The position numbers and the translations under genes were made by a program. A stretch of DNA of 64,000 nt from the IMG/VR virus record IMGVR_UViG_3300029893_000001, positions 1 through 64,000 of that record, one strand, 5' to 3'. Positions 905 through 63,329 of the stretch are shown here, piece after piece (the stretch's first letter is position 1; each line of letters starts with the position of its first letter). The notes below the pieces were generated by a model that was not told the origin of the DNA, ran no database searches, and saw only the letters and a list, made by a program, of their open reading frames with translations.

Positions 905-944
905 GTCAACCCTGCCGACACCGTTTAGTATCGGCAGGGTTGAC
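905..944 (-). promoter_or_regulatory. Phage promoter motif embedded in a perfect 14-bp inverted repeat
   Basis: GTCAACCCTGCCGA (905-918) and TCGGCAGGGTTGAC (931-944); the minus strand reads CAACCCTGCCGATACTA. Confidence 0.7.
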
Positions 945-2510
945 GTCCTTTACTAGTCGAGCGGGGGATTCCCAATGAGGGCGTCGACCGTATCGACGAG
1001 ATCTGCCATCTCCTCAGGAGAGAGGCGAATCTCTTCTCCGGAGAGAATTGCTCGGTTCTTCGCGTCACGTAGCCAACGGAGAGCGGAATCCTTTCGGCCT
1101 CGACTGGCCTGATCCTTCGCGTTGAGCAACGCCCACTTCACAGAGCCGGGTGTCATCAATCGTCTAGCGCCTGTTCGATCCACTGCTTCACCAGACCATA
1201 AGGTCGATTGATGAAGTAGGTGAACTTGTCGTCTCGCTGTCGCAGGACAGTCACGTTTGCTTCCTGACGATGGGCCGAGACACTGATGACCTCGTCGGGA
1301 TCGATCATCGCGCTCTCTCCGTTCGTGAGAGGCATCTCCAGAAGATGACCGACGAACTTCGGTGCCTCCCCTACCGGCTGCGCCGTGGCCGAAGGAGGAG
1401 CCGACGGAGGGACGAACTCATGGATTCGACGTGCAGGGATACTCATGATTGACAGGTTCCTTTTCGAATTGACAGGTGGGGAAATTGGTTGGAGGTAGTT
1501 AGCCCCCGAACTCTGATTACCAGGACCGAACGTAGCCGTAACCGGGGCAGCCGGTACGAGGGCACTTGACCCGTTCGTATCCGTCAGGACCTCCGCTGTA
1601 ATCCCTCCCGGAGTAACGTTCGACCTCTTCTGGAAGGTATTCTATGACTGCTTCACAGTCCCGGCAGGTTACGCGTTTCGGCTTCGGACCTTCAACGATC
1701 TTTGCCATATCATTAACCCGGATAGACTCCGATGACGGCCGAGTTGACGTGTTCACAGAAATGGGTCTTGAGCTTGTCGCTCACTTCGAACCACATTTCC
1801 AGTTCCTTGGGGTTCCATGAGCCACTCGGGATTCCCGACTCACAGTGAATCACGACATCGGCGTTCGGCGCCCATTCCCCTGGATCGTCTTCACCGAGAA
1901 AGGTTGCTTCCTCGATGATCTTGCGACGACGAGCCGGGTCCGCCGAAATGTATCGACCGAAGACTTCGTCGATTGCCGAACGGACCCTCTCCAGGATATC
2001 CGGAGTACTCATCTCACGACCTCACGGAAGGGAAAATCCGTGGCCGCCATCAGGACACGACCGATGCGTTGGCCGAAATTGGCTCCGGCGTCGTAGCACT
2101 CGTTCGCGTTCTGGTTGTCGTCCCACGTCATCCCGATATAACTCTCATCCTGTTCGCGCTCTGCGACGAGGCCGTCGATGACTCCGATCTTGAATGCCTC
2201 ACGGGCTTCACTGTCCGCCAGAATGCCACGGACTGTGAACGAGATCGGAAGAGCCCAGATGAAAGACTCCAGCTTCTTGATCATTACTCCCTCACCTCGT
2301 GGTTGCTTTCAGGCACAAAGACCTGAGCGACTCCATTCGGAACGTACCTGTTGTCCCAATCCTTCATGTGGGGATCGGTGTCGAGTAGTACCGAAGTAGG
2401 TTGGCTGTCGGAAATCCCACTTCCTTCTAGGCACACGACGACCACGGTGTCCCCTTTCAGAGGGGATTCTTCCCTAACTCGCTTCAGCTCAGCGATCATT
2501 TCGTCGATGG

Positions 2511-2966
2511 TCATCCGTACACGACCTCGCCCAGAAGGCAGAGCTGAAGGAAAACATCTCCGGTACACGCGTCGTAGTTCGTGCTGAGGAAATCTCCCCA
2601 ATGGCGCGGGTACTTCTCTGCCATGAGAGTCAGTCCTCGCTGTACCGCATCGCGGTCGAGTACGAGAGGAGCGTACTTCTTGTCCGTGCCCTCGTCGAAG
2701 ACGCGACAGATCACCGCACCGCCATCCAGAAGCGGGTAATCGTTGTGCTTGAATACCTCGTCTTCGTCAATGACGGGGCGGACAACCTTCGGCTCTCGGT
2801 AGTCCATGATGCGACACCAGTAACTGACTCCGCCCTCGAAGCCAGAGCAGATCAGACTGGCAACATCTCGGGCAGAAACGTCGATCTGAACCTTGAACCC
2901 GTCCGGTGGGCCGCAGTCAACCTCGAACTTTGAAACCTCGTCGTTCTTACCATTGGACATCATCAT
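2511..2966 (-). CDS. Conserved-looking phage hypothetical protein
   Basis: EGGVSYW...DA..GDVFLQLCLLGEVVYG motif typical of a phage early-gene family. Confidence 0.6.
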   Translation of the reverse strand: MMMSNGKNDEVSKFEVDCGPPDGFKVQIDVSARDVASLICSGFEGGVSYWCRIMDYREPKVVRPVIDEDEVFKHNDYPLLDGGAVICRVFDEGTDKKYAPLVLDRDAVQRGLTLMAEKYPRHWGDFLSTNYDACTGDVFLQLCLLGEVVYG

Positions 2967-3692
2967 TCTCCTTCCTTATTTTCGGCTCCTGCGTGCAACG
3001 AGAGCGATTTTCCCTAAAAGAGCAATCTGAGGGCGCGGAAGCGCTATGTTGTGGGTGTGGCTGGTGCCAGAGAAAACCGCACTCATTGCACGCAGGAGCG
3101 TGCTTTATACTAGGACGTGAGGTCGATGAAGGACCAAACCGTGTGGTCCTCCGAGAAGTGTGCCTTCAGAATCTTGACGATTCGAGACCGAGGTGAGAAG
3201 GCACACTTCTTTTTGTCATCGCCTACGGAGGCAATTGCACCAAGTAAGTAGGCGAGATCCGCTCCGACTCTACCGCGGAAAGTCTCGGTGCTGACCAGGA
3301 CTGCGGTGTATACATCCTTCATCAGAAGGAGACGCTTTCGGTCGTTCATTTTCATCCCTTCAACGAAGACGGGCCCGAAGATTTATGATCTCTTGGGCTG
3401 CAAGTTGTTGACCTGGCGACGAAGTCTCGAACGCTCTCGGGATCGAGAACACCAGGAATGCCAATCATCCACGGCTCTCCCGGTTCTTCCTTGTTCTCGA
3501 AATCGACGTACTCCTGGGCCTTCTCATGTGAGGGGAACACCGTTGCCTCACTAGGGTCCAGAGTGTCGATATGCATCTCTGATGGTTCGCTGCCCTGCGG
3601 GACTGGCCGATTGAAGACGATCAGGTATGCACCAGTGAACTTATTGAAGACCACACACTTTTCTTCTTCGGCGTCTTCACGGTCAGCTTCGG

Positions 3693-4991
3693 TCATGCGC
3701 CCATCCTTCGTTCGGCCTCGGACTCACGGATGTAGTCGTAGTGGTCGTTGATGATCTCGTCAGCCGCCTTTAGGGCAACCTCGCTGGTTCGCTCGCGATT
3801 GATCACGAGTGACGTCGTACGGCCCCCACACTCGTAGCAGTTGACGTTGTACGATCCACGGAAGTACTCCTCAGCGAAATCAGGGTCCTCGCTGAATTCG
3901 TCCGCCGTGATTCCGTGAGCGTCGATGCTGGGGTTCACGTGCTCGCCCTTTCCGTCGCAGGTCCCGCAGACCTCCCACTTGAGGTGCAGCACGTGCTCGA
4001 CCATGCCGGGTTCCAGGAATCGAAGAACCCAATCTCCGAGTTCCTCTCGCGCCTTCTGAACGAGTTCCATCGAAGCGTTAGGCCACTGCTCCATGTCGTA
4101 GTCCTGGAGACCGAGCCAGGACCGGAGCGTCTCCTCGTACTGCTCCTTCGTGGTCTCTCCGTGGACCATCCTATTCAGCGCCCGGCCAAGGCTACCGAAC
4201 GAAATGCTTCCAGTCGAGAACATGTCCCAGCCCTTCGACGCACGGAGCTTGCACTTCTGGAAGAAGTTCAGGCCTTGCTCGTCCTCCTGGTCACGAATGA
4301 TCCATTCCATGGCACCGATTCCGAAGTGGAACGGAATCCTTGGTCCGGAGCCCTGCGTCATGTAGTATGGCAGGTTGTCTTGCTGGATCTCTCGAAGCGA
4401 GAAAACCTTACGTCCGTTCTTCTTGAACCACAGGCGAATGCTCGGACGAGTACGATTTTGCGAGTCGTCCTTATCTAGCTGAATCCAATCGCGGGGACCG
4501 AATTGCAGAGACAGAACGATCGTATGCGGAGCCTTGGGCCTTTCGGTGTCCCATTGGCTTTGCCAGCGGCTCGCAAGATCCACTGAGAGGTATCCCTTGA
4601 AGAAGTTGTAGAAGCTCTTCGTACGAAGGGCGTCCACCAACATCTCTCGAAGCGTGCCCTGAAACCAGGTACGCCGGGACTCCGGAAGGAAGTCCATGTA
4701 TCCCTCGGGTCGCTCGGGGAAATGGATGCTCCACCCGTAGCAGCTTCCCATGTACTTGGGCTCGATCTTCTTGCTATCGACGAGACGATCGATCACCTCA
4801 TCGATGAACTTCGAGATACTCTCGTCGAGTTGCTCCCCTCGAAGCTCCAACTCCGACTTCTCCCGCAGAGGAGCCGCGGGAAGATCGGGCTCGACGTAGA
4901 AAGTCGCGGTCATGGCATCCAGGTCGATCTCGACCTCGGGAAGCGACTTGAGGTCGGACCCATACATTGCCATCCTGTCTCGACGGTCCAT
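3693..4991 (-). CDS. Phage protein with C-terminal DnaJ-type CxxCxGxG zinc finger
   Basis: CGTCDGKG...CYECGG motifs; downstream of the promoter motif at 5034. Confidence 0.65.
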   Translation of the reverse strand: MDRRDRMAMYGSDLKSLPEVEIDLDAMTATFYVEPDLPAAPLREKSELELRGEQLDESISKFIDEVIDRLVDSKKIEPKYMGSCYGWSIHFPERPEGYMDFLPESRRTWFQGTLREMLVDALRTKSFYNFFKGYLSVDLASRWQSQWDTERPKAPHTIVLSLQFGPRDWIQLDKDDSQNRTRPSIRLWFKKNGRKVFSLREIQQDNLPYYMTQGSGPRIPFHFGIGAMEWIIRDQEDEQGLNFFQKCKLRASKGWDMFSTGSISFGSLGRALNRMVHGETTKEQYEETLRSWLGLQDYDMEQWPNASMELVQKAREELGDWVLRFLEPGMVEHVLHLKWEVCGTCDGKGEHVNPSIDAHGITADEFSEDPDFAEEYFRGSYNVNCYECGGRTTSLVINRERTSEVALKAADEIINDHYDYIRESEAERRMGA

Positions 4992-5033: not shown

Positions 5034-5050
5034 TAGTATCGGCAGGGTTC
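5034..5050 (-). promoter_or_regulatory. Repeated phage promoter motif
   Basis: plus strand TAGTATCGGCAGGGTTC, about 42 nt upstream of the 4991 start. Confidence 0.75.
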
Positions 5051-5412: not shown

Positions 5413-5990
5413 CAGTCAGGCGACCTTGCGGTCTTGTTCCCGGGCCCTCTTCCACTCCATCGTGAAGAAGGTCACCAGATGAACCTTGTTTTTCTGCCAC
5501 ACGTCCCAAGATCGCTGTTTCGTCTTCACGTGTTCAACGATCGTCTTGAGAGGGATCTCTCGGTGTGCAGCTTCTTGTAGGACTTTGAATAGACTCCGAA
5601 GAATCTCCTCGTCCGTCATTCAGTTCACCATCTTCTGTGCGGTGTTCTTCGCACCGAAGATTTGGTCCCAGCCGGTCTTGAATGCCTTGCTGTTGACCAT
5701 CGCGGGTCCCTGAGACGTGGCCCTTCCCACACGGCCGTGGTTTCGAAGGAGAGTGAAAGGACCGGCCTGCTGGATTTCCACCAGTTCCACGTTGGGATCG
5801 AGAGGCTTCCCTTCCTCGAAGGGGCGGAGGGTTCCTAGCGCTACCGCGCCATCGCGTTCGAAGAGAACGTGTTGACCTTCGTGGGTTTCACATTCGCCCA
5901 GAATGATTCCCACGTGTTCGGAAGGCTCTTTCTTGTCATCTTTATCAGTCACAATTGACCTCCCGCTGCCCGATGTAGGCGGCTACGGCT

Positions 5991-6007
5991 TACTATCGGG
6001 AGGGTTC
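5991..6007 (-). promoter_or_regulatory. Repeated phage promoter motif (variant)
   Basis: TACTATCGGGAGGGTTC, about 39 nt upstream of the 5952 start. Confidence 0.65.
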
Positions 6008-6641
6008 GCTCTACTAGAAGTCTTCTGACGCACCTTCCGGATCCTCGTCCCAATGTGCCGGCACCAAACGAAAATCCTGTTCTAACTCGTCCACGGAGAC
6101 ATAGATTACTGGACGACCGCGCCCTGGTCCAGCGAGTGCTACTGTACCATCTTCGCCGATCGCTGTCACCTCCCATGAGCATAGATCGAATCCGATGGGC
6201 TTTCCCTGCCATCGCTGACCCGTTGCAACTGTGGTTTGTGACATAGCTACTTCTTCCGTATCGCTGACATTTGGCGTAGGATGAGGTTCACGGTGAGGAC
6301 ACCGCAAGCATTGTTGAAGCTCGTTTCCTGCGCGTAGGATTCGCTCGGAGGGTTCTCGGGTACAACCACCACAATGTCGTCGAACCCCTTTCACCTCAAC
6401 AATTCGACTTCAGTCCCACAGGGCTTGACGACGCAAATCGAAGTTACTTCCTCTCCTTCTACAGAACGGCCGCCCCACTCTGTCATGAAGAGGTCGTACC
6501 AAAATTGCGCCCGAGCCATTGCGTCGTCATAACTATTTGCCACGAATTTGAAACGTCCGCCACGTGAGAAGTATGCGTACGCTACAAATTCGGGCTTTGT
6601 CATAATGACGAGATAATATCGAGCGCGCCCGTGATTAAACG

Positions 6642-6712: not shown

Positions 6713-7438
6713 TCAGATGTCCAGGCTGTCCAGGAGCCCGTCGAGGTCTTCCGAAGAAAGGTCCTCGGACCCGTTCTCCTCCGAAGCCTCCTCCGTCTCC
6801 TCCTCGTCCGAGGTGAGCGCTGCGACCGCCGCCGCGACCTCGTCCTCGTCCTCCGAGGCCTCCTCGGTCTCTTCCTCCTCGGTCTCCTCCGAGGCCACCG
6901 CCTGAGCGGCCGGCTTCGAGGGGGCCGCCTTCGCCGGAGCGGCGGCGGGCGTCTCCTTCCGACGACCACGACGCTTCATCGGCGTGCCGTCCTGCTTCAC
7001 ACCGTAGGGCGCCAGCGGCCGACCATCGGCGTCCGTTCCGTACGGCGCGGTCTCCGAAACCGAACCCGGAACCTGAAGAGCCTCGATCTGCTCCTCCTTG
7101 ATCGTACGAACCTTCTTGGTGGGCCCCGCCGCCGGGGGCGTGGTCTTCGTCTTCGCGGGCGCCTGCCTGGCCTTCGCGGGGGCCGGAGCCGCGGGAGCGG
7201 CGGCGACCGGAGCCGCCCCGACCGGGATGCGCTCGAAGCTGAAGCCCTGCTCCTTCAGGGCGATGCGCAGGTTGCGGAGCGAAACCGCGAGCGGGTCGTT
7301 GGTCAGACGGCCCTCTCGGGCGAGCTGGTTGTTCAGCTCCGCGACGCGGTTCTCGATGACGGTGCTGAACGCACCCTCCAGCATCGCGGGAATCGGCTTC
7401 GGGGTGTGGGTGCGGGTCTGAGGCTTGGTCTTTGCCAT
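6713..7438 (-). CDS. Putative nucleoid-associated or DNA-mimic protein (Pro/Ala linker, KRRGRRK basic patch, very acidic tail)
   Basis: DGTPMKRRGRRK motif followed by an E/D-rich C-terminus; own promoter and terminator; extreme GC3. Confidence 0.6.
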   Translation of the reverse strand: MAKTKPQTRTHTPKPIPAMLEGAFSTVIENRVAELNNQLAREGRLTNDPLAVSLRNLRIALKEQGFSFERIPVGAAPVAAAPAAPAPAKARQAPAKTKTTPPAAGPTKKVRTIKEEQIEALQVPGSVSETAPYGTDADGRPLAPYGVKQDGTPMKRRGRRKETPAAAPAKAAPSKPAAQAVASEETEEEETEEASEDEDEVAAAVAALTSDEEETEEASEENGSEDLSSEDLDGLLDSLDI

Positions 7439-7512: not shown

Positions 7513-7529
7513 TATTATCGGCAGGGTTC
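7513..7529 (-). promoter_or_regulatory. Repeated phage promoter motif
   Basis: TATTATCGGCAGGGTTC upstream of the 7438 start. Confidence 0.75.
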
Positions 7530-10184: not shown

Positions 10185-10771
10185 TAGTAGTAGCTCTTTT
10201 CGGCGGCGTTCCGCCCTTCCGTGGTGATGCTCGTCGCGCCTGCTTTGTTGCGGCTCAAGAAACCTCGTGCCACCAGCGAATCGATTTCCGATGCAGTCGC
10301 CCCCAGTCGCTCCAGGTATTCTTTCCTGTAGCTGCTCTTGATTCCCTTGAAGACGCCGAGAATCTTTGCTTCCTTTTCGCTGACGTTCGTCGTCGGCGGA
10401 AGGAGCTGGGGATTCATATTCTTCGGACTGATGTAGATGGTCGCCGAAGCCGGATATCCCGTGCCCCCACTCCCCATCCCAGAGATGAAGGCGATATCGC
10501 GCGGAATCTCGACACTCTCGTCAGAGTCATCGATCGTCTTCGTGAACATGTTCGAGCCCCCGAAGGAGCCCCACGTGATCTTACACTCTTCGGTATCGTC
10601 GAGACGACATGCCACGACGTACCCGCGACGGCCTCGTCCGCTGGGCGGTCGCGTGAAGAAAGTCTCTTGGACGCACACCTCGACGTCCTTTCGGCAATAG
10701 CCGGCCATCCCCAGCCCCTTCTGGATGGAGGGCGGAAGTTCGCTGACCTTCATGTAGTGACCCATGATCAT
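10184..10771 (-). CDS. Hypothetical protein, possible C-terminal winged helix
   Basis: LVARGFLSRNKAGATSITTEG wing-like motif; downstream of a promoter motif. Confidence 0.5.
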   Translation of the reverse strand: MIMGHYMKVSELPPSIQKGLGMAGYCRKDVEVCVQETFFTRPPSGRGRRGYVVACRLDDTEECKITWGSFGGSNMFTKTIDDSDESVEIPRDIAFISGMGSGGTGYPASATIYISPKNMNPQLLPPTTNVSEKEAKILGVFKGIKSSYRKEYLERLGATASEIDSLVARGFLSRNKAGATSITTEGRNAAEKSYY

Positions 10772-10808
10772 TTCCTCCCTGCCGCTGACAAGCGGCGATC
10801 ACGGGCTT

Positions 10809-10825
10809 TATTATCGGCAGGGTTC
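10809..10825 (-). promoter_or_regulatory. Repeated phage promoter motif
   Basis: TATTATCGGCAGGGTTC, 38 nt upstream of 10771. Confidence 0.75.
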
Positions 10826-12226: not shown

Positions 12227-12258
12227 AAAATGGGGGCCGCCGAAGCGACCCCCATTTT
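12227..12258 (-). terminator. Intrinsic terminator after the CCA enzyme gene
   Basis: AAAATGGGGG..CCCCCATTTT stem with long minus-strand T tract. Confidence 0.75.
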
Positions 12259-13519
12259 AGAGAAGAGTACGAGCTTTGGTGAGAAGAATCTGCTTCTCGT
12301 TTCGTGCCGGGTCGTCGAGCACGAACTCCAGGAGCTGCTTAAGCAACTCTCCTAGCTTGCGCGAGGGAGGGATGCCTAGGTGCTCTTGCAGTTCATCGCC
12401 GGAAACGGCAAGGCCTTTTAACTCCAGCGGCACGCCTGGGTCCAGAACCTTCCTGAGACGCTCCCGGAGGGCGATTCGATCGCTCTCCGAGCTGCCGTAG
12501 GGGTTCGACAGGTACACCAGCTCAGCGTCGCGTAGGTAACGAACACCGATATTGCTGGCCCACCTTCGAATTGCGGAATCTTCCCAGGCTAGCATCTCTG
12601 ACACTGAAGGTGCCTCACGAAGTCCAAGAGCTACCCGCTTGATAAGCTCTCGGTCCGCGTTGGACGTCTTCATTGCTCTAAGCCAGATTTCAATGGCTCG
12701 TTCACTGGCCCTGGCCTCCAGAAGAACAGCAGCCATTGCCAAAGGAAAGTTCCTGGGTGCCGAATCTAGCCGAGTCATCGCCCTAGAGAATCTGGCTGCC
12801 TCTAACTCAGCCAGGGGGCCTCCGATTGAGTCTAGAATCCCGGTTCGCTTCATGATGTAGAAAGCGGTAGAGGGCCAGCGTGCCTTTTCTACTGCCTTCA
12901 CCCACTCGGCTAGAATCCGTTCCGACGCCACCTTAGAGAAAGTCTCTAAGTTCGGACGAATTGCCTCTTCCGTGGAGCGCTCCAATTCACACTGGAGTGC
13001 CGCACAGAATCGAGCAGCCCTCAGAACTCGAAGGCCGTCCTCCTTGAACCTTTCCATCGGGTTGCCGACCGCCCGAATGACTTTGGCTTGGAGGTCCTTT
13101 CTTCCGCCCCATGGGTCTGTGATTTCCCCTGAAACAGGATCGGCTGCGATGGCGTTGACGGTGAAATCCCGACGTGCCAAGTCTTCTTCGACTGACTTCA
13201 CGAAGAAAACTTCGTCAGGTCGCCTACCGTCCGAATATGCACCTTCACCACGAAGAGTGGTGACCTCATATCCTTCACGGCCAATCATCACCGTTACGGT
13301 CCCGTGCTGGATTCCAGTTGGGATCGTGTGGGGAAATAGCGACTGGACGTCTCCGGGGAGAGCCTCGGTCGTCAAATCCCAATCTGCTATTTGATTTCCT
13401 GCGCCTCGAAGAAGGTCACGAACGCAACCACCTACAATCCAGGCCTGAAAGCCTGCGCTGCGGAGCGTTGCCGCGACCTGACGGACAGGCTCAGGGATTA
13501 GCGTAGGATCTATTTTCAT
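12257..13519 (-). CDS. cca: CCA tRNA nucleotidyltransferase (class II)
   Basis: VGGCVRDLL..DWD, RGEGAYSDGRRP loop, DLARRDFTVNA and EDGLRVLRAARF motifs. Confidence 0.92.
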   Translation of the reverse strand: MKIDPTLIPEPVRQVAATLRSAGFQAWIVGGCVRDLLRGAGNQIADWDLTTEALPGDVQSLFPHTIPTGIQHGTVTVMIGREGYEVTTLRGEGAYSDGRRPDEVFFVKSVEEDLARRDFTVNAIAADPVSGEITDPWGGRKDLQAKVIRAVGNPMERFKEDGLRVLRAARFCAALQCELERSTEEAIRPNLETFSKVASERILAEWVKAVEKARWPSTAFYIMKRTGILDSIGGPLAELEAARFSRAMTRLDSAPRNFPLAMAAVLLEARASERAIEIWLRAMKTSNADRELIKRVALGLREAPSVSEMLAWEDSAIRRWASNIGVRYLRDAELVYLSNPYGSSESDRIALRERLRKVLDPGVPLELKGLAVSGDELQEHLGIPPSRKLGELLKQLLEFVLDDPARNEKQILLTKARTLL

Positions 13520-15978: not shown

Positions 15979-16638
15979 GCGGCCTTTTCCTTCCTCTTCT
16001 TGGTGCCGGCGGTCCTAAGGAGCTTGACTGCGGCATCACGTCGCGCCTTGCGTGCCTTAAGAACCCGAATCATCTGGGGAATCGAAACCTTCCAGACCAG
16101 CTTCGCGCCCTTCTTCGCGTGGTAATTCCGGATGCCGTACCCGATGACGGTCGAATCCAGCTTACGATCCTTGAGGGTTTGAAGTGCGAGCTTCACGCAC
16201 AGCCGCTTCGCCTCTTCCTCAGATCGTGCGTGGCCGACTTGCATCTCTGCCACGCGCAGGAGTCCCTGTGCCATCAGGGTTGCTCCCTTCCTGTGACCCT
16301 GGACCGTGTTGACCTCCGGGTACATCATGAACACCAACCACATGAGAACCTCCCTTGCCGACGTTGACTATTCTGAGCGCAGGCTACGACGAATTGCGCG
16401 GTTACGGAGCGTGACGTCGTTCACGGCCTCGAAACCAGTCTTCTCCATGAAAGCAAATTCATCCTCGGCTGTCCTATGAGCAATAGCCTCGGAAATGCCG
16501 TCACGTTGAAGCTTGATGGCTTCGTATCGAATCCAGCCCTTCTTGAACTCAGCGAACTGTTCCGCACTCATTTCGCCGGTAGTCAGAAGAACCGAGCTGG
16601 GATTACCGACCAAACCCATCCGGGCCTCCTTTTGCTCT

Positions 16639-16655
16639 TATTATCGGCAGGGTTC
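16639..16655 (-). promoter_or_regulatory. Repeated phage promoter motif
   Basis: TATTATCGGCAGGGTTC, 20 nt upstream of 16619. Confidence 0.75.
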
Positions 16656-22141: not shown

Positions 22142-22158
22142 TAATATCGGCAGGGTTC
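22142..22158 (-). promoter_or_regulatory. Repeated phage promoter motif
   Basis: TAATATCGGCAGGGTTC. Confidence 0.75.
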
Positions 22159-30564: not shown

Positions 30565-30581
30565 TAGTATCAGCAGGGTTC
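30565..30581 (-). promoter_or_regulatory. Repeated phage promoter motif (variant)
   Basis: TAGTATCAGCAGGGTTC, 12 nt upstream of 30553. Confidence 0.65.
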
Positions 30582-37495: not shown

Positions 37496-37512
37496 TACTA
37501 TCGGCAGGGTTC
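37496..37512 (-). promoter_or_regulatory. Repeated phage promoter motif driving rIIA-rIIB
   Basis: TACTATCGGCAGGGTTC, 50 nt upstream of rIIA. Confidence 0.75.
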
Positions 37513-42566: not shown

Positions 42567-42583
42567 TAGTATCGGCAGGGTTC
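42567..42583 (-). promoter_or_regulatory. Repeated phage promoter motif
   Basis: TAGTATCGGCAGGGTTC directly after terminator 42600-42630 on the minus strand. Confidence 0.8.
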
Positions 42584-42599: not shown

Positions 42600-42630
42600 A
42601 CCCGCTGGGGACGCAAGGTCCCCAGCGGGT
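42600..42630 (-). terminator. Intrinsic terminator
   Basis: ACCCGCTGGGGAC / GTCCCCAGCGGGT stem. Confidence 0.7.
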
Positions 42631-45897: not shown

Positions 45898-45914
45898 TAT
45901 TATCGCCAGGGTTC
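45898..45914 (-). promoter_or_regulatory. Repeated phage promoter motif (variant)
   Basis: TATTATCGCCAGGGTTC, 39 nt upstream of 45859. Confidence 0.65.
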
Positions 45915-50408: not shown

Positions 50409-50740
50409 CCCGCTACCGATTCAGCATCCATCGCGGGTTACGACCGTGCTCGCCCGAGCGTCTCGCTGGCACGCCCACTATCCCGCTACCGATTCAGCAT
50501 CCATCGCGGGTTACGACTTCCCAGCGATCGGCCCTCGCTGGGCTCGTTTCGAGCAACCCCGCTACCGATTCAGCATCCATCGCGGGTTACGACCTTGGGC
50601 GAGCGTTACCTACATCGCATGAGGCCCAGCCCCCGCTACCGATTCAGCATCCATCGCGGGTTACGACGACCAACTGAAGAACCTTGTCCCCCATGGAGTT
50701 ACGGCCCGCTACCGATTCAGCATCCATCGCGGGTTACGAC
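50409..50740 (-). CRISPR. CRISPR array, 5 identical 36-bp repeats and 4 spacers (37, 40, 38, 37 nt)
   Basis: Plus-strand repeat CCCGCTACCGATTCAGCATCCATCGCGGGTTACGAC at 50409, 50482, 50558, 50632 and 50705; orientation inferred from the degenerate trailer and the leader/cas side. Confidence 0.97.
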
Positions 50741-50990
50741 GGGTCCCTCAACTCTGCTGTATTTTCAAGGACCTACAGACTGCTTTGCGAGAGGGTCTTG
50801 CAACGTCCTTATTTTCGCGACCCGGGATGGAGACTGAAACGATACCGAGACGCCTACTCAGCCTACGTTCTCGGATGGAATTCCCCTTGATTTTCAAGGG
50901 TCTGAGTACCTTCGCGAGCGGTGCCCAGTGTCTAGCGATCACTGGACCCCTCGCGCTCGGGCCTAAGCGGGAGGCCCTTTATCACAGACG
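50741..50990 (-). ncRNA. Leader plus putative tracrRNA, anti-repeat at 50814-50849
   Basis: The minus-strand transcript pairs with the repeat at 26/36 Watson-Crick plus 4 G-U positions; extra hairpins CCCTTG/CAAGGG and CCAGTG/CACTGG. Confidence 0.72.
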
Positions 50991-52385
50991 TTACGTCTGA
51001 GAAGACTTACCTCGAAGTCTGCCCGCCGAACGCTTAGCGCTGGTTTTGGCATCGGGTAGTGCAGACGGCTTCCCGTCACGGAGAAGCATGTTCCAGACGT
51101 AGATCACGTCTACAGAACGTTCGAGAAGACACTTAGAACACCTGAATGTGGTACCATTTACGTCTTCGTTTACAGTACCGCAATTAGGGCAAGTTCTCGA
51201 ATTGTAGTCAGAAGGGACTACTTCTACCTCCCACCCCTTCTTCTTTGCGGCCCACAAAATGGCTTCCCTAAGCTGCGCCAATGGAAAACTACGAACGATC
51301 TGTTCGACGTGTTTTCCTAGTTCGGGAGCACCATCTTTTGCCGGGTTAGTCCAATCCTCGATGAGGATTCTGGTCACACCGCGGCGTTCACCCAAACGAA
51401 TGGCGTGAGCTGCGACTTCCTGGCATTTGGTTCGAACCCATCGTTCTTCTGCACCTTTGAGCTTGGTGACACGTTCGTAATGGCGTGCGTGACCGTGGCC
51501 TTTGGCTCCTGTGCCTAGCTGCCGGCGATGACTACTCAAAGATCGTAGTCTGGCTTTGTACACATCCTTGTACCGACGGATGTCTTCTCCCGTTTCAAGG
51601 ATCGTAGTGTAAGCTTCCTGTGACCCTTCCCTAGAAATAGCAACAGACAGGAAGTTTCGGACTCCACGATGAAGTGCCATCGTGCGGCCCTTCGAAACCT
51701 CTTCTACCTCAAAGGAATAGGCAACAAAAGCCTGCCACTTTTGCTTTCCATCGTGAGTCTCACGCACCAATCGAAGGTCCCCCATAGAATCTGGATTCTG
51801 AAGGATCCTCTTAATGGCAGCAAATCCACTGGTGTGGTAGGGCCGAACAACAATACGCGTCCACGGGCCCTTCAGAAGCTGTACGCTGAGAACGGCGCTG
51901 CCGTTCTCAGAGGTCAGCTTAACGCCTTGTCCAACGACGTAAATGGGTGACGGCGACTTGAACGAGGGAAGCGACATCGTCCCTTTCCACGCTTCCTTCT
52001 TCCATTTCTGCCAACGAGCGAATGCCGCGTTAGAAAGTCCAAGAACAGGGGAGCTTGATGGCTGAAGCTGACTGAGTTGGTCGTCTCCTGCATAACTCTT
52101 CTTACGGGCCACTCTGTCGGCTGCCTGCCGACGTTCATTCTCCCAGGAGTCTCTAGTTAAACGATAGGAATCGGTGCGTGGATGTAGATCTTTGCCTCCA
52201 GGGCCCAGGCCGTTTCCCTTCTTGTACTTTCCTGCTCGGTCATTCACCTCTAGGTCGGTGATGACCGAATTCAGTACGCGGTGAAGAGGAAGCTGAATAG
52301 TTCTGAGCTGGGATCCCAAGGTATCCCAGTCACAGTCTAACGGCTTAACGACCTCAAGCCGCAGTGTTGCGATGAGCGTTGCCAT
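50991..52385 (-). CDS. cas12f: Cas12f (type V-F/TnpB-derived) effector with RuvC-I Asp->His, probably nuclease-dead
   Basis: LEVVKPLDCDW, G.MSLPSFK, GAKGHG, RuvC-I MALHRGV, RuvC-II ILIEDW, SRTCPNCG..FRCSKC zinc ribbon, RuvC-III SVDVIY; adjacent array. Confidence 0.9.
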   Translation of the reverse strand: MATLIATLRLEVVKPLDCDWDTLGSQLRTIQLPLHRVLNSVITDLEVNDRAGKYKKGNGLGPGGKDLHPRTDSYRLTRDSWENERRQAADRVARKKSYAGDDQLSQLQPSSSPVLGLSNAAFARWQKWKKEAWKGTMSLPSFKSPSPIYVVGQGVKLTSENGSAVLSVQLLKGPWTRIVVRPYHTSGFAAIKRILQNPDSMGDLRLVRETHDGKQKWQAFVAYSFEVEEVSKGRTMALHRGVRNFLSVAISREGSQEAYTTILETGEDIRRYKDVYKARLRSLSSHRRQLGTGAKGHGHARHYERVTKLKGAEERWVRTKCQEVAAHAIRLGERRGVTRILIEDWTNPAKDGAPELGKHVEQIVRSFPLAQLREAILWAAKKKGWEVEVVPSDYNSRTCPNCGTVNEDVNGTTFRCSKCLLERSVDVIYVWNMLLRDGKPSALPDAKTSAKRSAGRLRGKSSQT

Positions 52386-52962
52386 GCTTAGTCTTGCTCT
52401 TCTTTGCCAACTTCTTTTCAGCTCGAAACTTTTTGACTTCTTCCTTCAACAACGCAACCTGTTGACGGAGTCTTTCGTTCTCTTCTCGGAGCTTTTCGTT
52501 TTCCTTTACGAGGACCGAGTACGATTTATTCCCAGACTTCTGTGCAGCACGCACTGTCTGCTGCTCCTTGACAATGCGCTGCGCCTGCGAATCAGTTAGA
52601 TGCCCATTGCTTTTTTGCGCAATTAGGGCTCTATCGATGGCTTCCTTCATTTCGGGAGCGCCCCTAAGACGTCCAACGTGGGCCAAAATCTTGACAGGTG
52701 CCTTTTCAACCACTTCAGGCGGCAGTGTCTTCACGGCACGGCGATAAGATGAAAACCGAGACACGTCTTGTCGATCGCGAAGAAGACCCTGAGTTTCGCA
52801 AAACTTCAGAAAATCCTGTCCGGATCCCTGCCAGAGATGGGTGTGCTCCTCAGCACTTGCCAAGAAATTGTACCACGCCTTTTCAGAATCCAAATACGCC
52901 TGTCTCAGGCGCTTAGCTTCTGTGATGAACTGTTCTGGGGTCATGGAACTAAAATCGTACAT
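52354..52962 (-). CDS. Uncharacterised Cas12f-associated protein with C-terminal coiled coil
   Basis: Overlaps cas12f start by 32 nt; LVKENEKLREENERLRQQVALLKEEV heptads; 19 nt downstream of a promoter motif. Confidence 0.75.
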   Translation of the reverse strand: MYDFSSMTPEQFITEAKRLRQAYLDSEKAWYNFLASAEEHTHLWQGSGQDFLKFCETQGLLRDRQDVSRFSSYRRAVKTLPPEVVEKAPVKILAHVGRLRGAPEMKEAIDRALIAQKSNGHLTDSQAQRIVKEQQTVRAAQKSGNKSYSVLVKENEKLREENERLRQQVALLKEEVKKFRAEKKLAKKSKTKHGNAHRNTAA

Positions 52963-52980: not shown

Positions 52981-52997
52981 CAGTATCGGCAGGGTTC
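52981..52997 (-). promoter_or_regulatory. Repeated phage promoter motif driving the cas operon
   Basis: CAGTATCGGCAGGGTTC. Confidence 0.75.
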
Positions 52998-58752: not shown

Positions 58753-59118
58753 CTACTCCAACAAAGCGAATGCACCCTGCGGACCCAAGAATACCATCTT
58801 GGCGCTGTACACCGGAACCAGGCTTTCTTTTACAACAAAGGTCTCGGTGCTATACGGGTTGTAGTAGATTTCGGTCCAACCTTTACGGTTGTTGTACTCG
58901 CAGAGTGCGCTAAATCCAACGGAGTGTAGGGTTCCTCGGACCCCTGCATGGACGTTCTTCTGCTTCGTAGCGAGTACTCGCGCTCTACCCCTCGCTCCAA
59001 CAACTAGTCGTGCGTCCTGAATGCAGACACACGTGTTCCGAACAGCCACACGACCCGTAGACTCATCCCTCACAGAGTAGCATTTCTTGTGAAGGTTGCG
59101 GTAAGAGAACGCCTTCAT
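58753..59118 (-). CDS. Conserved phage protein (YRNLH...KNVHA..YNPY)
   Basis: Motif recognition; 19 nt after a promoter motif. Confidence 0.65.
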   Translation of the reverse strand: MKAFSYRNLHKKCYSVRDESTGRVAVRNTCVCIQDARLVVGARGRARVLATKQKNVHAGVRGTLHSVGFSALCEYNNRKGWTEIYYNPYSTETFVVKESLVPVYSAKMVFLGPQGAFALLE

Positions 59119-59136
59119 GGCGTCTCTTTACACTGC

Positions 59137-59153
59137 TACTATCGGCTGGGTTC
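59137..59153 (-). promoter_or_regulatory. Repeated phage promoter motif (variant)
   Basis: TACTATCGGCTGGGTTC. Confidence 0.7.
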
Positions 59154-60447: not shown

Positions 60448-62160
60448 TCACTTCATCCTCATCTCAAAAAGCGTCTCACCGCGGGTGAAGCCAAGACGAC
60501 CGCCTCTCTTTACGAGGTGCATATCGCCTCCCAGTGCTTTGTCCTCGACTACCTTCACTGACGACGAGCCCTTCTTGGAGCTGAAGAGTTCGAGATTTTC
60601 ATCTTCAGTCAAGCAGGCGCAAACCCCGGTGTCCAGTACAACGAAATTTAAGCCAGTAGGTGTGATATCTTCCACCTCGCGTACATCGTACGACGTGAAG
60701 TCGTCCGTAAATCTGAAGATAAATCGATTGTACTTGCCGTTTTTCGTCGTGATAGCCATCAAGACGCCCCCGTCGAACTTGATGTCTACGACCTTGACCG
60801 GATCTAGCTCCGGAATTCGAATCTGATAGCTCGCCTTGGACCGAGGGAACAGCGAGACGAAGGTTGAGCCTAGCATGTCCTGAAGCACGCCGCCCTGAAA
60901 GAGTCGGCTCGCCCTCTCCATGACCGTGGCCAGCTCTCGCGTGGACGCGATGATCTTCGGCCGCCCGTCGGCGTGCTGAGTCTCGGTGAGCACCACCTCC
61001 AAGACACGGTCTCGGTTCCGAATGTACAGGCGCCCGTCGTACGACGCCAGCTCGTCAGCACGTGACACGAAGGGAATCGCGTCACCACTGACACCGCACA
61101 GCATCACCTGCGACGTACTCTGGTCGATACGAGCCACTACGGGATACTGTCCAACCGGGGTAAATCCTACCTCGATAGGGTCGGGGGAATAGAAGGCAGT
61201 TCGAGGCCCAACCCAAACAGACCCGTCTTGGGTTTGAGTAATTCCTGTACTCGCGTTTCCGAAGTAAAAGAATCGCCTAATTGTGTGCGGGTACTCCTGG
61301 AGCTTCTTGATGTCCAGGTGGCCCGATGAAACGATCGTCCGGATCTGCTGAACAGCCCACGCAACAGCCTGCAAATCTGTCGGGGGCGGCAAGCGCTTCT
61401 TGTCCTGAAAGACCGCCTTGAACCAAGAACGGTATGCTTCAGGAATGACATCCAATGGGTAACAGACCCGAGGCACCGAAACAGCCGGATCAAATACGGA
61501 GGCGCACGCCTTCATGCGGTCTTCGAGCGCCTTGATAGACGGGTGCTTTCCTTTGTACGGATGAATCCCAATGAAGAGCTGGAACGCCAGAATCCCAAAG
61601 CTGAACCAGTCGCTTAGCTCGGTGAAATCACCATGAAGCGTGAGAGGATCGCGGACGGACGGCATAATCGCCGTGGCCGGATAATGCTTCGTCTGGTAGC
61701 TGTCGACGTCGATCCAAAACGCTTGGCCAAAATCCTTCGATACGAGGACGTTCATCTCGTTCAGGTCTACAACAAGCACCCCTGCCTTGTGAATTTCGAC
61801 CACGTTCTTCTGCATCGTTTGAACGAGCGAAAGAACCTTCTGGTGGTCCAGTCCCTCACGCTCCCGGAAGGAGCGAGGGAAAAGCTGGCATAAGGCGAGG
61901 GTATCCGAAATGAATCGCATCGTATACCCAAGCGACCTCCCCCGCTCATCACAGATGATGTCCTTGGGACGAATCACGTTCGGGTCGGAGATTCCAGAAA
62001 GCTCCGATATCTTCCCCTCGGGGATCATCTTTTTCGGGTCAGTGTACAACTTGTAGGCTACCTGGCCCTTTACGTACACTGAGCCTTCCCCACCGGAAGC
62101 AAGGAAGTCATTCTTCGACAGATTCACGGCAGTGGAGCTGCCTTTGACGTAGACCTTCAT
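60448..62160 (-). CDS. YegI-like Ser/Thr protein kinase with C-terminal beta-rich domain
   Basis: SGGEGSVY, YKLY, VVDLNEMNVLV, IDVDSYQ, DWFSF...GIHPYKG. Confidence 0.85.
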   Translation of the reverse strand: MKVYVKGSSTAVNLSKNDFLASGGEGSVYVKGQVAYKLYTDPKKMIPEGKISELSGISDPNVIRPKDIICDERGRSLGYTMRFISDTLALCQLFPRSFREREGLDHQKVLSLVQTMQKNVVEIHKAGVLVVDLNEMNVLVSKDFGQAFWIDVDSYQTKHYPATAIMPSVRDPLTLHGDFTELSDWFSFGILAFQLFIGIHPYKGKHPSIKALEDRMKACASVFDPAVSVPRVCYPLDVIPEAYRSWFKAVFQDKKRLPPPTDLQAVAWAVQQIRTIVSSGHLDIKKLQEYPHTIRRFFYFGNASTGITQTQDGSVWVGPRTAFYSPDPIEVGFTPVGQYPVVARIDQSTSQVMLCGVSGDAIPFVSRADELASYDGRLYIRNRDRVLEVVLTETQHADGRPKIIASTRELATVMERASRLFQGGVLQDMLGSTFVSLFPRSKASYQIRIPELDPVKVVDIKFDGGVLMAITTKNGKYNRFIFRFTDDFTSYDVREVEDITPTGLNFVVLDTGVCACLTEDENLELFSSKKGSSSVKVVEDKALGGDMHLVKRGGRLGFTRGETLFEMRMK

Positions 62161-62471: not shown

Positions 62472-62648
62472 CGCTGTACTCGCTTCATTTTTCGGGTTGG
62501 CCTGTCCCACCTCCAGAGCATTTTAGAGATGGCGTCAACTGCAACCTGTCCTACGATTTCAGCCGCCTCGCGAAGGAGTTTTTCCTCTCGAACACGCTCT
62601 TCCCATTCTGCAGCACTCATCAACTCGCGCTGCTGAAGAAGAGCGTCC

Positions 62649-63064
62649 TCATACAGAAGTTGTCTCGCCGCTTTGAGGTCCATGATGACGTAGGTAGTTA
62701 GTAGCTCTCTGGGTGAGGCGGTAGTTTGTTACGGCAAATTTGGTCCCGTCTTGGGACGACTTCCCGCGAGAACGCCCCCTACGAAGATAGCCATTCAGGG
62801 CCAAAGATTCCATTTGATCTTTTGCTTCCCTGAACCTGAAATTATCTCGAATGAAATCGCGAGCGCCGTAGTAATCCCGAGCAACTTCAGCACAAAAAAC
62901 AGGCTTGCTCCGACGTTGGATCCAGTGAAGGAGTAGCACGTCCCGCGTCTGCAGACCGGTTTCGGACCGGATGGCCTCTGCCATCGCAAAACTTCTGCTC
63001 GTGATATTCTTATGATCGCAAAACTTCTGCTCGTGATATTCTTATGCTGCCAATGTACCTTCAT
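62649..63064 (-). pseudogene. Winged-helix-like gene frameshifted by a 32-bp duplication
   Basis: With one repeat copy, the ATGA-coupled start at 63064 reads MKVHWQHKNITSRSFAMAEAIRS... in frame with 62649..62984. Confidence 0.7.
62983..63046. repeat. Perfect 32-bp tandem duplication
   Basis: ATCGCAAAACTTCTGCTCGTGATATTCTTATG x2. Confidence 0.95.
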
Positions 63065-63312
63065 CGGTATTTCCACCGTCTTTTCTTGGCGCGCTTTTCT
63101 GTGCCTGGCATACCCTTCGGGATGCCCTGTGGCCCAGGCACTGGCAAGCCGTTCAACTTGGCAAAGAAAATGACAAGGCTCTCTCCGATGAGCTGACGGA
63201 TGCGCAGAGATTCGTCCATCGTAAAGACGAACGGGTCTAGCGAAGTGTGCTTGCTATGCTGCTCGACGATGCGAGCCAGCTTTTTCACATTCGCAATGGG
63301 TCTTGCCATGAC

Positions 63313-63329
63313 TATTATCGGCTGGGTTC
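63313..63329 (-). promoter_or_regulatory. Repeated phage promoter motif, directly before an apparently leaderless gene
   Basis: Minus strand GAACCCAGCCGATAATAGTCATG; ATG at 63309. Confidence 0.7.

What the first reader, a model, noticed from the sequence alone, without database searches (positions are those of the whole stretch)
905..63329. Fourteen copies of a 17-bp promoter motif GAACCCWGCCGATANTA with a sigma28-like -10 core
Seen: copies at about 926, 5034, 5991, 7513, 10809, 16639, 22142, 30565, 37496, 42567, 45898, 52981, 59137 and 63313. All face the minus strand, 4-75 nt upstream of a start codon, and one lies immediately after a terminator. Knowledge: GCCGATAA is the FliA/sigma28 -10 consensus. 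The copy checked (7513) has no TAAA -35; a contiguous GAACCC extension is conserved instead. Inference: the motif is read by a phage-encoded sigma factor/RNAP or a redirected host alternative sigma, and it defines a regulon that includes rIIAB and the cas operon.
Basis: partly seen in the sequence, partly recalled or inferred. Interest (0 to 1): 0.65.

Follow-up and report, generated by a model that had tools for sequence, protein, structure and literature searches.

The report
Lineage-specific promoter of a huge phage
The repeated 17-base motif is real and is almost certainly the main phage-specific promoter of an uncultivated 392-kb phage that has no RNA polymerase of its own; related phages carry their own versions of it, but which protein reads it is still open.

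Summary
The window is the first 64 kb of a 392,328-bp IMG/VR phage. Genome-wide there are 68 copies and none on the plus strand. Sixty are intergenic, with a median of 33-35 nt to a start codon. They are packed every 0.3-1.5 kb at 360-392 kb, and several sit just after strong hairpins.

Two complete relatives carry lineage-specific versions: AAAGyCCrnCGATAsTA and CAACCCTGGCCAyACTA. In the relative with genes on both strands, 57 of 57 copies point the way of the next gene. It is therefore a promoter.

The sigma-28 reading holds only as a partial resemblance. There is no TAAA -35, the CGA core is lost in one relative, and the phage's single sigma looks like RpoD/SigA, not FliA.

No T7-like, N4-like or multisubunit polymerase was detected in any of the three genomes. 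Start codons without a ribosome site cluster 6 and 8 nt after the motif.

Best reading: a -35-less promoter for host core polymerase. GATAnT acts as the -10 (A-11 and T-7 invariant), a 10-bp lineage-specific box abuts it, and transcription starts about 6-8 nt downstream.

The parts
926..942 (-). motif copy CAACCCTGCCGATACTA; 71 nt before the start of the 158-aa gene 378-854; its first 12 bases are repeated inverted 7 nt downstream
5034..5050 (-). motif copy, exact; 42 nt before the 432-aa gene 3693-4991
5991..6007 (-). motif copy GAACCCTCCCGATAGTA; 38 nt before the 110-aa gene 5620-5952
7513..7529 (-). motif copy, exact; 74 nt before the 241-aa gene 6713-7438
10809..10825 (-). motif copy, exact; 43 nt before a gene of about 193 aa ending at 10184; an 8-bp inverted repeat of CCCTGCCG overlaps its ribosome site
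16639..16655 (-). motif copy, exact; 19 nt before the 83-aa gene 16368-16619
22142..22158 (-). motif copy, exact; 42 nt before the 236-aa gene 21389-22099
30565..30581 (-). motif copy GAACCCTGCTGATACTA; 11 nt before a 73-aa ORF; the TGA stop of the upstream gene overlaps the motif's first bases
37496..37512 (-). motif copy, exact; 49 nt before rIIA (35188-37446), which is followed by rIIB (33943-35151); a sigma-70-like TTGACT-18-TAGAAT lies directly upstream (37518-37547)
42567..42583 (-). motif copy, exact; 39 nt before the 241-aa gene 41802-42527
42600..42630 (-). 13-bp GC-rich hairpin (terminator-like, tail GUGUCCCCGUUUAGGG) that ends about 16 nt before the motif copy at 42583
   Evidence: -33.2 kcal/mol, z -5.7
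45898..45914 (-). motif copy GAACCCTGGCGATAATA; 38 nt before a 67-aa ORF
52981..52997 (-). motif copy GAACCCTGCCGATACTG; 18 nt before the 202-aa gene 52354-52962, which is followed by the TnpB/Cas12f-like gene 50991-52385 and a 5-repeat array at about 50440-50740
59137..59153 (-). motif copy GAACCCAGCCGATAGTA; 18 nt before the 121-aa gene 58753-59118
63313..63329 (-). motif copy GAACCCAGCCGATAATA; only 3 nt before the ATG of the 82-aa gene 63061-63309

Best explanation
The motif is the principal phage-specific promoter class of this ~392-kb phage. It drives the densely packed small-gene region at 360-392 kb and about one operon every 5 kb over 1-145 kb, including rIIA/rIIB, the Cas12f-like locus and some tRNAs. 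It most likely works as a -35-less promoter for a sigma-dependent, bacterial-type polymerase, that is, the host core enzyme. In this reading GATAnT (motif positions 10-15) is the -10 element, with A at -11 and T at -7. The ten bases that abut it (GAACCCTGCC, about -22 to -13) form a lineage-specific recognition box that replaces the -35. Transcription would start 6-8 nt after the motif, at motif positions 22-25. Specificity for the box comes from a phage-encoded factor that co-evolves with it. The candidates are the phage's own 450-aa RpoD-like sigma or a still unidentified early or injected factor acting with a sigma. Shown: the anatomy, distribution, orientation rule and lineage-specific variants of the motif, and that no polymerase was detected but a sigma is present.
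For: Promoter nature:
- 68 copies genome-wide, none on the plus strand.
- 60 of 68 are intergenic, although only 12.7% of the genome is intergenic.
- Median 33-35 nt to a start codon.
- Copies sit 10-30 nt after strong GC hairpins, which leaves no room for another promoter.
- Sigma-70-type sites in the dense region are at chance level (7 found against 6.4 expected), and most of those borrow the motif's own GATAAT.
- In relative G005, which has 398 plus-strand and 160 minus-strand genes, 57 of 57 copies point the way of the next gene.
- There is no conserved RNA structure and no Rfam hit.

Sigma-type reading:
- No polymerase was found with PF00940, PF00562 or PF00623.
- No polymerase catalytic motifs were found.
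- phmmer --max and tblastn with T7 RNAP and N4 vRNAP against all three phage genomes gave only noise.
- Pfam and PHROG scans of about 50 of the larger proteins gave no polymerase.
- One sigma-70-family gene is present, with orthologues in every relative found.
- Motif positions 11 (A) and 15 (T) are invariant in all 68 copies and are kept in both relatives' versions.
- ATG codons that open long ORFs without a ribosome site cluster at offsets 6 and 8 after the motif (6 each). All six at offset 6 are preceded by C, and only one lies at offset 0.
- Position 23 is a purine in 77-91% of copies.
- Ribosome-site-like sequences pile up from positions 22-23 onward.

Lineage-specific box:
- The three genomes read GAACCCTGCC, AAAGyCCrnC and CAACCCTGGC.
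- In the sigma orthologues, residues flanking the invariant cores of regions 2.4 and 3.0 differ: SMLYYL, SMLFYV and SILYHI; AIRLKQ, AIRSKL and AVIKKH.
Against:
- The contiguous 17 bp followed by a purine is also the anatomy of T7-type promoters.
- A few genes have an ATG 0-3 nt after the motif (184120, 63329; G002 121088), which a start at positions 22-25 would cut off.
- The pile-up of ribosome sites at position 23 could reflect common descent of promoter-leader cassettes rather than a start site.
- The cores of the sigma's DNA-reading regions are invariant across 8 phages although the box differs.
- The sigma keeps sigma-70-like region 4.2 residues, yet the motif has no -35.
- The sigma gene lies in a motif-free block next to RNR and RecA-like genes, which is the usual place of a late sigma.
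- Two other signals conserved in all three phages, GTTATCT(A) and cTGTAAA-N8-9-ATG, are alternative cognate sites for that sigma.
- If the motif drives the earliest genes, its reader must already be present at infection, which is unexplained.
Confidence: 0.55

Rival explanations
1. T7-style promoter. The 17 bp span -17 to -1 and the conserved purine is +1. It would be read by a phage-encoded, possibly virion-delivered, RNA polymerase of a kind too divergent to recognise, for example one of the giant ORFs without any family hit (2813 aa, 1687 aa, 1204 aa, 1156 aa, 931 aa).
For: The motif is a contiguous block with sharp edges and no upstream element, followed by a purine in 88-93% of copies in three genomes. 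Its variants, with a conserved 3' A-Y-A-n-T-A-R and a variable 5' half, resemble the T7/T3/SP6/K11 promoter series (own knowledge). One gene has its ATG directly after the motif (184120) and others have it 3 nt after. The 2813-aa and 931-aa ORFs lie in the head and packaging block next to portal and terminase.
Against: No hit to PF00940, PF00562 or PF00623. There are no T7 motifs A, B or C outside the DNA polymerase, except a lone LHDSL in the 931-aa ORF with no motif A or B, and no convincing DxDGD. phmmer --max and tblastn with T7 RNAP and N4 vRNAP gave only noise in three genomes. PDB, PHROG and Atlas searches on the giant ORFs were blank. Leaderless ATGs cluster at +6 and +8 after the motif, not at the purine.
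Confidence: 0.15
2. Host alternative sigma. The phage borrows the host's flagellar-type sigma-28 (or another host alternative sigma), which reads GCCGATA as its -10.
For: GCCGATA matches 7 of 8 bases of the sigma-28 -10 consensus GCCGATAA (PMC2859248). CGATA is kept in G000 and G002. The suggested start site lies 8-9 nt after GCCGATAn.
Against: There is no TAAA/TAAAGTTT at n11 upstream, while sigma-28 promoters depend on it. G005's version, GGCCAyACTA, lacks CGA. The box differs between related phages, which fits a phage-borne reader better. A scan of 185,579 species' genomes gave only chance-level singletons in the 120 rows returned, apart from one repeat family.
Confidence: 0.06
3. Not a promoter. 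It would instead be an RNA-level signal in operon transcripts (a processing site, or the operator of a translational repressor), or a DNA-level polar signal for replication, packaging or recombination.
For: Strict strand polarity could arise from gene or replication orientation. Some copies have a downstream inverted repeat of the motif's 5' half that overlaps the ribosome site: 12 bp at 942, 8 bp at 10825 and 376232. The mean is 4.94 against 4.70 +/- 0.10 for permuted pairs.
Against: Copies sit directly after strong hairpins and start transcription-unit-like spacings. There is no consensus structure or covariation. 88% are intergenic, at a fixed short distance from starts, unlike polar chromosome motifs. 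Orientation follows local gene direction 57 of 57 times in G005. No other promoter candidate exists in the dense region.
Confidence: 0.06

Closest known systems
Sigma-28 (FliA/SigD) promoters, TAAAGTTT-n11-GCCGATAA
   Same: The string GCCGATA, and the likely distance from it to the start site.
   Different: There is no -35 TAAA; a GAACCC block abuts the -10. The CGA core is not conserved in the relative G005. The only sigma in the phage is RpoD-like, not FliA-like.
T4 middle promoters (sigma-70 -10 plus a MotA box, read through sigma appropriation by MotA/AsiA) - own knowledge
   Same: A good -10 with no -35, and a phage-specific box that replaces the -35, giving a phage-specific class used for pre-replicative genes such as rII.
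   Different: The box abuts the -10 (about -22 to -13) instead of being centred near -30. MotA and AsiA homologues were not searched for. The box varies between related phages.
-35-less extended -10 promoters of phages that remodel host holoenzyme (e.g. Thermus phage P23-45 middle/late promoters) and minimal -10-only promoters of phage sigmas (T4 gp55 TATAAATA; phiEco32 gp36) - own knowledge
   Same: Recognition rests on the -10 region and the bases just upstream, with no -35, and a phage protein confers the preference.
   Different: The extension here is 10 bp long and sequence-specific, not TGn. TG sits one base further upstream than in the canonical extended -10.
T7-group single-subunit polymerase promoters (T7, T3, SP6, K11) - own knowledge
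   Same: A contiguous block of about 17-18 bp, an AT-rich 3' end followed by a purine, and relatives that differ in the 5' 'specificity' half.
   Different: No single-subunit polymerase gene was detectable in three genomes, and indirect evidence puts the start site 6-8 nt further downstream.

Membership tests
Sigma-28 / FliA-dependent promoter | -10 element GCCGATAA | tested here: inconclusive
   In G000, motif positions 7-13 read G58 C45 C54 G66 A68 T68 A67 of 68. G002 keeps CGATA. G005 reads GGCCAyACTA, so the CGA core is lost.
Sigma-28 / FliA-dependent promoter | -35 element TAAA(GTTT) 11 bp upstream of the -10 octamer | tested here: not met
   Columns -12 to -5 of the 68-copy logo carry at most 0.28 bits and show no TAAA. 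The consensus and the need for the -35 are taken from PMC2859248.
Sigma-28 / FliA-dependent promoter | A FliA/WhiG-family sigma is available to read it | tested here: not met
   The only phage sigma scores best with the RpoD/SigA family (7.7e-17). FliA_WhiG gives 42 bits against a cut-off of 190, and the best PDB matches are SigB, SigA and RpoS. The host's own sigma set is unknown.
T7-type single-subunit RNA polymerase promoter | A contiguous block of about 17-23 bp ending at an initiating purine | tested here: met
   17 conserved bases with sharp edges; the next base is a purine in 60/68, 56/60 and 53/57 copies.
T7-type single-subunit RNA polymerase promoter | A cognate single-subunit polymerase gene in the genome | tested here: not met
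   PF00940 gave nothing, though its control also rang nowhere. Motifs A, B and C were absent except in DNA pol A. phmmer --max and tblastn with T7 RNAP and N4 vRNAP gave only noise in G000, G002 and G005.
T7-type single-subunit RNA polymerase promoter | Transcription starts at the base right after the block | not testable with these tools
Indirectly, leaderless ATGs cluster at +6 and +8, not at 0.
Sigma-70-family -10 / extended -10 promoter without -35 | A -10 hexamer with A at -11 and T at -7 | tested here: met
   In GATAnT, A is present in 68/68 and T in 68/68. Both are kept in G002 (GATAsT) and G005 (CAyACT). The consensus scan itself picks the motif's GATAAT as a second hexamer.
Sigma-70-family -10 / extended -10 promoter without -35 | TGn immediately upstream of the hexamer (T-15 G-14) | tested here: not met
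   TG lies at motif positions 6-7, that is -16/-15, one base further upstream. The whole 10-bp block is conserved instead.
Sigma-70-family -10 / extended -10 promoter without -35 | Start site 6-9 nt downstream of the hexamer | tested here: inconclusive
   Long-ORF ATGs lie at motif positions 23 (6, all preceded by C) and 25 (6). Position 23 is a purine in 77-91% of copies. Ribosome sites begin from positions 22-23. There is no direct 5'-end data.
N4 virion-polymerase hairpin promoter | The promoter forms a short conserved hairpin and a vRNAP homologue is present | tested here: not met
   No consensus pairs in the 14 window copies and no similarity to N4 vRNAP.
T4 middle promoter (MotA/AsiA) | A MotA box centred near -30, with MotA and AsiA genes | not tested
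   No conserved element near -30 relative to the inferred start. MotA and AsiA homologues were not searched for.

The most novel reading that the evidence does not exclude
The motif is the time-zero (early) promoter of a clade of ~400-kb phages that encode no recognisable RNA polymerase. Its reader would be delivered with the DNA: either a virion-packaged sigma-family or appropriator protein that reprogrammes host core polymerase on entry, or a polymerase of an undescribed family hidden among the giant head-block ORFs.
Probability: 0.15. Interest if true: 0.8.

Novelty: new variant of a known kind. Interest (0 to 1): 0.5.

Why it matters
Huge uncultivated phages are known almost only from sequence, and their transcription programmes are unknown. 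This motif provides three things:
- A map of about 60-70 transcription units per genome in a clade of ~400-kb phages.
- A natural series of three diverged promoter versions that can be matched to candidate readers.
- Compact 18-bp parts that may be orthogonal to host promoters.

It also poses a concrete question. The early-looking region shows no host-type promoter and no polymerase gene was detected in the genome, so something must read these sites at the start of infection.

Tried and rejected
- Close GenBank relatives: a megablast of 7 kb against phages found none. tblastn with the 1156-aa ORF found only a hypothetical protein of Virus Rctr197k, and the 1687-aa ORF found nothing.
- Hidden polymerase:
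  - Pfam RNAP families gave nothing.
  - Catalytic-motif regexes gave nothing. A lone LHDSL in the 931-aa ORF led nowhere: Pfam, PHROG and PDB were blank and the Atlas model was poor, pLDDT 0.41.
  - PDB phmmer on the 1156-, 1687- and 2813-aa ORFs was blank.
  - T7 and N4 polymerases used as queries gave only noise.
- Second sigma: only sub-threshold region-4-like helix-turn-helix hits in small ORFs at 386456-386575, 273157-273246 and 306373-306423.
- Host sigma-70 reading: canonical TTGACA-N16-17-TAnnnT sites exist, but they are essentially confined to the tRNA island at 98-139 kb. Genome-wide counts equal the reversed-pattern control.
- RNA-structure reading: no consensus pairs.
- Inverted repeat between the motif and its leader: only weakly above permuted pairs, z about 2.4. 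Kept as an aside.
- Host via motif copies in bacterial genomes: chance-level singletons. The 19 copies in one Methanotrichaceae MAG belong to a multicopy repeat of at least 147 bp and are a chance match amplified by copy number.
- Stop-codon recoding linked to the suppressor tRNA: coding density is 0.93-1.0 in the late region under the standard code, so it was rejected.
- The terminator scan with a strict T-tail criterion misses most hairpins here, because their tails read CGUUUAAG rather than a U-run.

Full report
**Observation**

The pattern GAACCCWGCCGATANTA, with up to 2 mismatches, occurs 14 times in the window at exactly the coordinates given. All copies are on the minus strand, against 0.04 expected from shuffles.

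The window is bases 1-64000 of a single 392,328-bp IMG/VR virus record that CheckV rates complete; its GC content is 53%. Genome-wide there are 68 copies at up to 2 mismatches and none on the plus strand. They are packed every 0.3-1.5 kb at 360-392 kb, occur about every 5 kb over 1-145 kb, and are rare between 145 and 340 kb.

**Anatomy**

- The logo of the 68 copies has sharp edges.
- The base before the motif is T or C. GAACCC is invariant. Positions 6-9 read T/G/C/C at 47-58 of 68. GATA is invariant, position 14 is free, TA is invariant, and the next base is a purine in 60 of 68.
- From -45 to -2 the information content is near zero, so there is no -35 of any kind.
- With my own gene calls (560 genes, 507 on the minus strand), 50 copies are fully intergenic. 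Thirteen overlap only a gene end, and in nine of these the upstream TGA stop is the T plus the GA of the motif. Five lie inside ORF calls.
- The median distance to the next start codon is 35 nt.
- Several copies precede tRNA genes.
- Many copies in the dense region lie 10-30 nt after GC-rich hairpins of -23 to -33 kcal/mol (z -2.7 to -5.7). The hairpin tails read UUCUCGCGUUUAAG rather than a U-run. The window copy at 42583 is one of these.
- In the dense region, sigma-70-type sites are at chance level (7 against 6.4), and most of them use the motif's own GATAAT.

**Relatives**

Scanning IMG/VR for the exact motif found a 58-kb fragment with six copies on one strand. Searching with the phage's sigma found seven further contigs, two of them complete: G002 (424 kb, with terminal repeats) and G005 (388 kb). 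I fetched both whole.

Each complete relative has its own version of the element:

| Genome | Version | Copies at up to 2 mismatches | Strand |
|---|---|---|---|
| G000 | GAACCCTGCCGATAnTA | 68 | all minus |
| G002 | AAAGyCCrnCGATAsTA | 60 | all minus |
| G005 | CAACCCTGGCCAyACTA | 57 | 47 plus, 10 minus |

- G005 has 398 plus-strand and 160 minus-strand genes, and all 57 copies point the same way as the next downstream gene. This removes the worry that the strand bias merely reflects a one-stranded genome.
- Conserved across the three versions are A1, A2, C5, G7, C9, A11, A13, T15, A16 and the purine at position 17.
- Positions 0, 3, 4, 6, 8, 10 and 12 are fixed within a genome but differ between genomes. 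This is the signature of a reader that co-evolves with its site.

**Is it a promoter?**

Five points make a transcription start signal by far the best reading; I put it at about 0.9.
- The copies are intergenic.
- They sit at a fixed short distance from start codons.
- They follow the orientation rule.
- They are placed directly after hairpins.
- No other promoter candidate exists in the dense region.

There is no conserved RNA structure in the 14 window copies (0 pairs) and no Rfam family in the window.

**Who reads it?**

*Polymerase genes*
- Pfam models for T7-type and for both large subunits of multisubunit polymerases find nothing.
- Regex scans of all six frames for T7 motifs A, B and C and for the DxDGD metal site find only the family-A DNA polymerase and noise.
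- phmmer --max and tblastn with T7 RNAP and N4 vRNAP, taken from GenBank records, against the proteomes and DNA of G000, G002 and G005 return only noise.
- Pfam and PHROG scans of about 50 of the larger proteins identify DNA pol A-UDG, an SNF2 helicase, topoisomerase subunits, RNR, SbcC-like and RecA-like proteins, terminase, portal, rIIA/B and a CCA-adding enzyme, among others. None is a polymerase.
- Five giant ORFs (2813, 1687, 1204, 1156 and 931 aa) remain without any hit, so a wholly novel enzyme cannot be excluded.

*Sigma*
- There is one sigma-70-family gene (246993-248345, 450 aa). Its region 2 passes the Pfam cut-off and it matches phrog_351.
- It aligns with regions 2-4 of SigA, SigB, RpoS and RpoD, up to its last residue.
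- NCBIfam ranks the RpoD/SigA family first and FliA/WhiG lower; all matches are far below their cut-offs.

*Start site*

| Evidence | Result |
|---|---|
| ATG opening an ORF of at least 60 codons, without a ribosome site, across 191 promoters in four genomes | Peaks at offsets 6 (six cases, all preceded by C) and 8 (six cases) after the motif; one case at offset 0, four at offset 3 |
| Base at position 23 | Purine in 77-91% of copies |
| First ribosome-site-like tetramer | Piles up at positions 22-25, peaking at 23 in G000 and G002, against a flat control |

These fit a start 6-8 nt after the motif. That is the distance expected from a -10 hexamer GATAnT whose A-11 and T-7 are the two invariant bases. 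They fit a start at the purine directly after the motif poorly. The evidence is indirect, a few genes contradict it (184120, 63329), and cassette ancestry could contribute.

*Sigma-28*
- The resemblance to GCCGATAA is real in G000.
- The -35 TAAAGTTT, which sigma-28 promoters need (PMC2859248), is absent.
- G005 has lost the CGA core.
- The phage sigma is not FliA-like.

For:
- It is the only sigma.
- Its residues at the positions that read -12 and the extended -10 in E. coli sigma-70 are changed (T440 to L, R441 to Y, H455 to N, E458 to Q, by transfer from the SigA alignment). This fits a promoter with G or C rather than T at -12 and a non-TGn extension.
- Residues flanking the invariant cores differ between the three phages.

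Against:
- The cores of regions 2.3, 2.4 and 3.0 are invariant in eight orthologues that are only 39-68% identical overall.
- Region 4.2 keeps sigma-70-like contact residues although the motif has no -35.
- The gene lies after RNR and near a RecA-like gene in a motif-free block, as late sigmas do.
- Two further signals are enriched upstream of genes and conserved unchanged in all three phages, so they are equally good cognate sites for it.
  - GTTATCT(A): 30 of 87 copies are intergenic in G000. It is present before the terminase/portal block and before the RNR-sigma operon. Some copies have TTAnAc about 16 bp upstream.
  - cTGTAAA: it lies 8-9 nt before ATGs that lack a ribosome site.

I therefore commit to the class (a -35-less promoter of a sigma-dependent polymerase with a lineage-specific abutting box; 0.55).

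**Canonical host-type promoters do exist**

Nine intergenic TTGACA-N16-17-TAnnnT sites cluster in the tRNA island at 98-139 kb. Two of them end 10 nt before a mature tRNA 5' end. Another lies directly upstream of the motif copy before rIIA. This suggests that canonical host-type promoters are also used in this genome, and that the motif is a separate class.

**Comparison with known systems, and novelty**

The element works most like the phage-specific -35-less classes: T4 middle promoters, T4 late promoters, P23-45, and the phiEco32 type. It looks like T7-group promoters, and it shares a string with sigma-28 promoters. It fails a defining feature of each (see the membership table).

It is a new variant of a known kind, a phage-specific promoter class, found in an uncultivated clade of ~400-kb phages in which no polymerase gene was detected. 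Jumbo phages that lack a polymerase but carry RpoD-like sigmas have been noted (PMC7824862), but I found no description of their promoters.

**Limits**

No expression data could be obtained. Gene calls are my own heuristic. The host is unknown.

Noticed in passing
window 50440-52385 (-): A 464-aa TnpB/Cas12f-like protein (Cas12f1-like TNB domain; PHROG transposase) is followed by five copies of a 36-nt repeat, GTCGTAACCCGCGATGGATGCTGAATCGGTAGCGGG, with spacers of about 37 nt. This is a miniature type-V-like CRISPR locus on a phage, downstream of the motif copy at 52981-52997.
   Followed up: partly
window 29784, 40650, 42902, 59132 (-); also G000 85502, 187427, 254528, 319650 and sites in G002 and G005: cTGTAAA lies 8-9 nt before ATG start codons that lack a ribosome site. 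The spacing peak is present in all three phage genomes and absent for the control hexamer. It looks like a -10-type element for leaderless mRNAs, and it often sits right after the upstream gene's stop codon.
   Followed up: partly
G000 251948, 258381, 268329 (-); 259582, 272031, 321039, 332339 (+); in the window, TTATCT at 6616 (-): GTTATCT(A) is enriched in intergenic DNA (30 of 87 copies in G000) and conserved unchanged in G002 and G005. It lies before the terminase/portal block and before the RNR-sigma operon, and some copies have TTAnAc about 16 bp upstream. It is a candidate middle/late promoter and an alternative cognate site for the phage sigma.
   Followed up: partly
window 37518-37547 (-) and 8421 (-); G000 98047, 98190, 106287, 106852, 109751, 127071, 129835, 139229 (-): Canonical TTGAC(A)-N16-17-TAnnnT promoters cluster in the tRNA island, where two end 10 nt before tRNA 5' ends. 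One lies directly upstream of the motif copy before rIIA, giving tandem promoters.
   Followed up: partly
G000 89626-180618, 306544-309040, 365491-369932: There are 44 tRNA genes and a tmRNA (130644-131041, tag ANNVVSLFGNVVANDNGTAEPLPLAA). A tRNA with anticodon CUA (an amber suppressor, which aragorn calls 'Pyl') lies at 105653-105726, 22 nt after a motif copy. TAG still ends 90 genes and coding density is high, so there is no sign of recoding.
   Followed up: partly
window 881-942, 10759-10825; G000 376232, 392243, 369963, 381272: In a subset of copies the motif's 5' half (for example CCCTGCCG) is repeated inverted in the leader, often overlapping the ribosome site (12 bp at 942, 8 bp at 10825). 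In read-through transcripts this could mask the ribosome site, so that only promoter-proximal transcripts are translated. Overall the enrichment is weak (4.94 against 4.70 +/- 0.10).
   Followed up: partly
window 30581; G000 76965, 137117, 181026, 184120, 369963, 371809, 375340, 384979: In nine copies the TGA stop codon of the upstream gene is formed by the T before the motif plus its first two bases (T-GA-ACCC). Gene end and promoter overlap with no spacer.
   Followed up: no
G000 360-392 kb (e.g. L016 16246-16294, L017 8548-8596); window 42600-42630: Terminator-like hairpins here end in UUCUCGCGUUUAAG-type tails with a recurrent TTTAA rather than a U-run, so a standard intrinsic-terminator scan misses them.
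   Followed up: partly
G000 386456-386575 (-), inside a 109-110-aa ORF 43 nt after the motif copy at 386731: A small early protein gives weak, sub-threshold sigma region-4-type helix-turn-helix matches (PF04545 E 0.017, PF08281 E 0.029). It is a possible early transcription regulator.
   Followed up: no
loci L097, L101, L109, L137, L153, L158 (CAWDQJ01, Methanotrichaceae MAG): The exact 17-mer occurs 19 times in one archaeal MAG, but only as part of a near-identical multicopy repeat of at least 147 bp on both strands. This is most likely a chance match multiplied by a mobile element.
   Followed up: partly
G000 95509-97149, 90512-92035, 137116-137646; window 12257-13519, 60448-62160: The phage carries Ro60/TROVE-vWA-like, nicotinate phosphoribosyltransferase-like, peptide deformylase, CCA-adding enzyme and Ser/Thr-kinase-like genes, a set centred on RNA and translation maintenance.
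   Followed up: no
G000 296869-305310 (+), 293414-296209 (+), 215990-221053 (-), 202018-205632 (-), 168538-172008 (-): Five giant ORFs (2813, 931, 1687, 1204 and 1156 aa) have no Pfam hit; four of them were also blank in PHROG and PDB sequence searches (the 1204-aa ORF was scanned with Pfam only). The first two lie in the head/packaging block after portal and terminase and could be ejected cargo proteins.
   Followed up: partly
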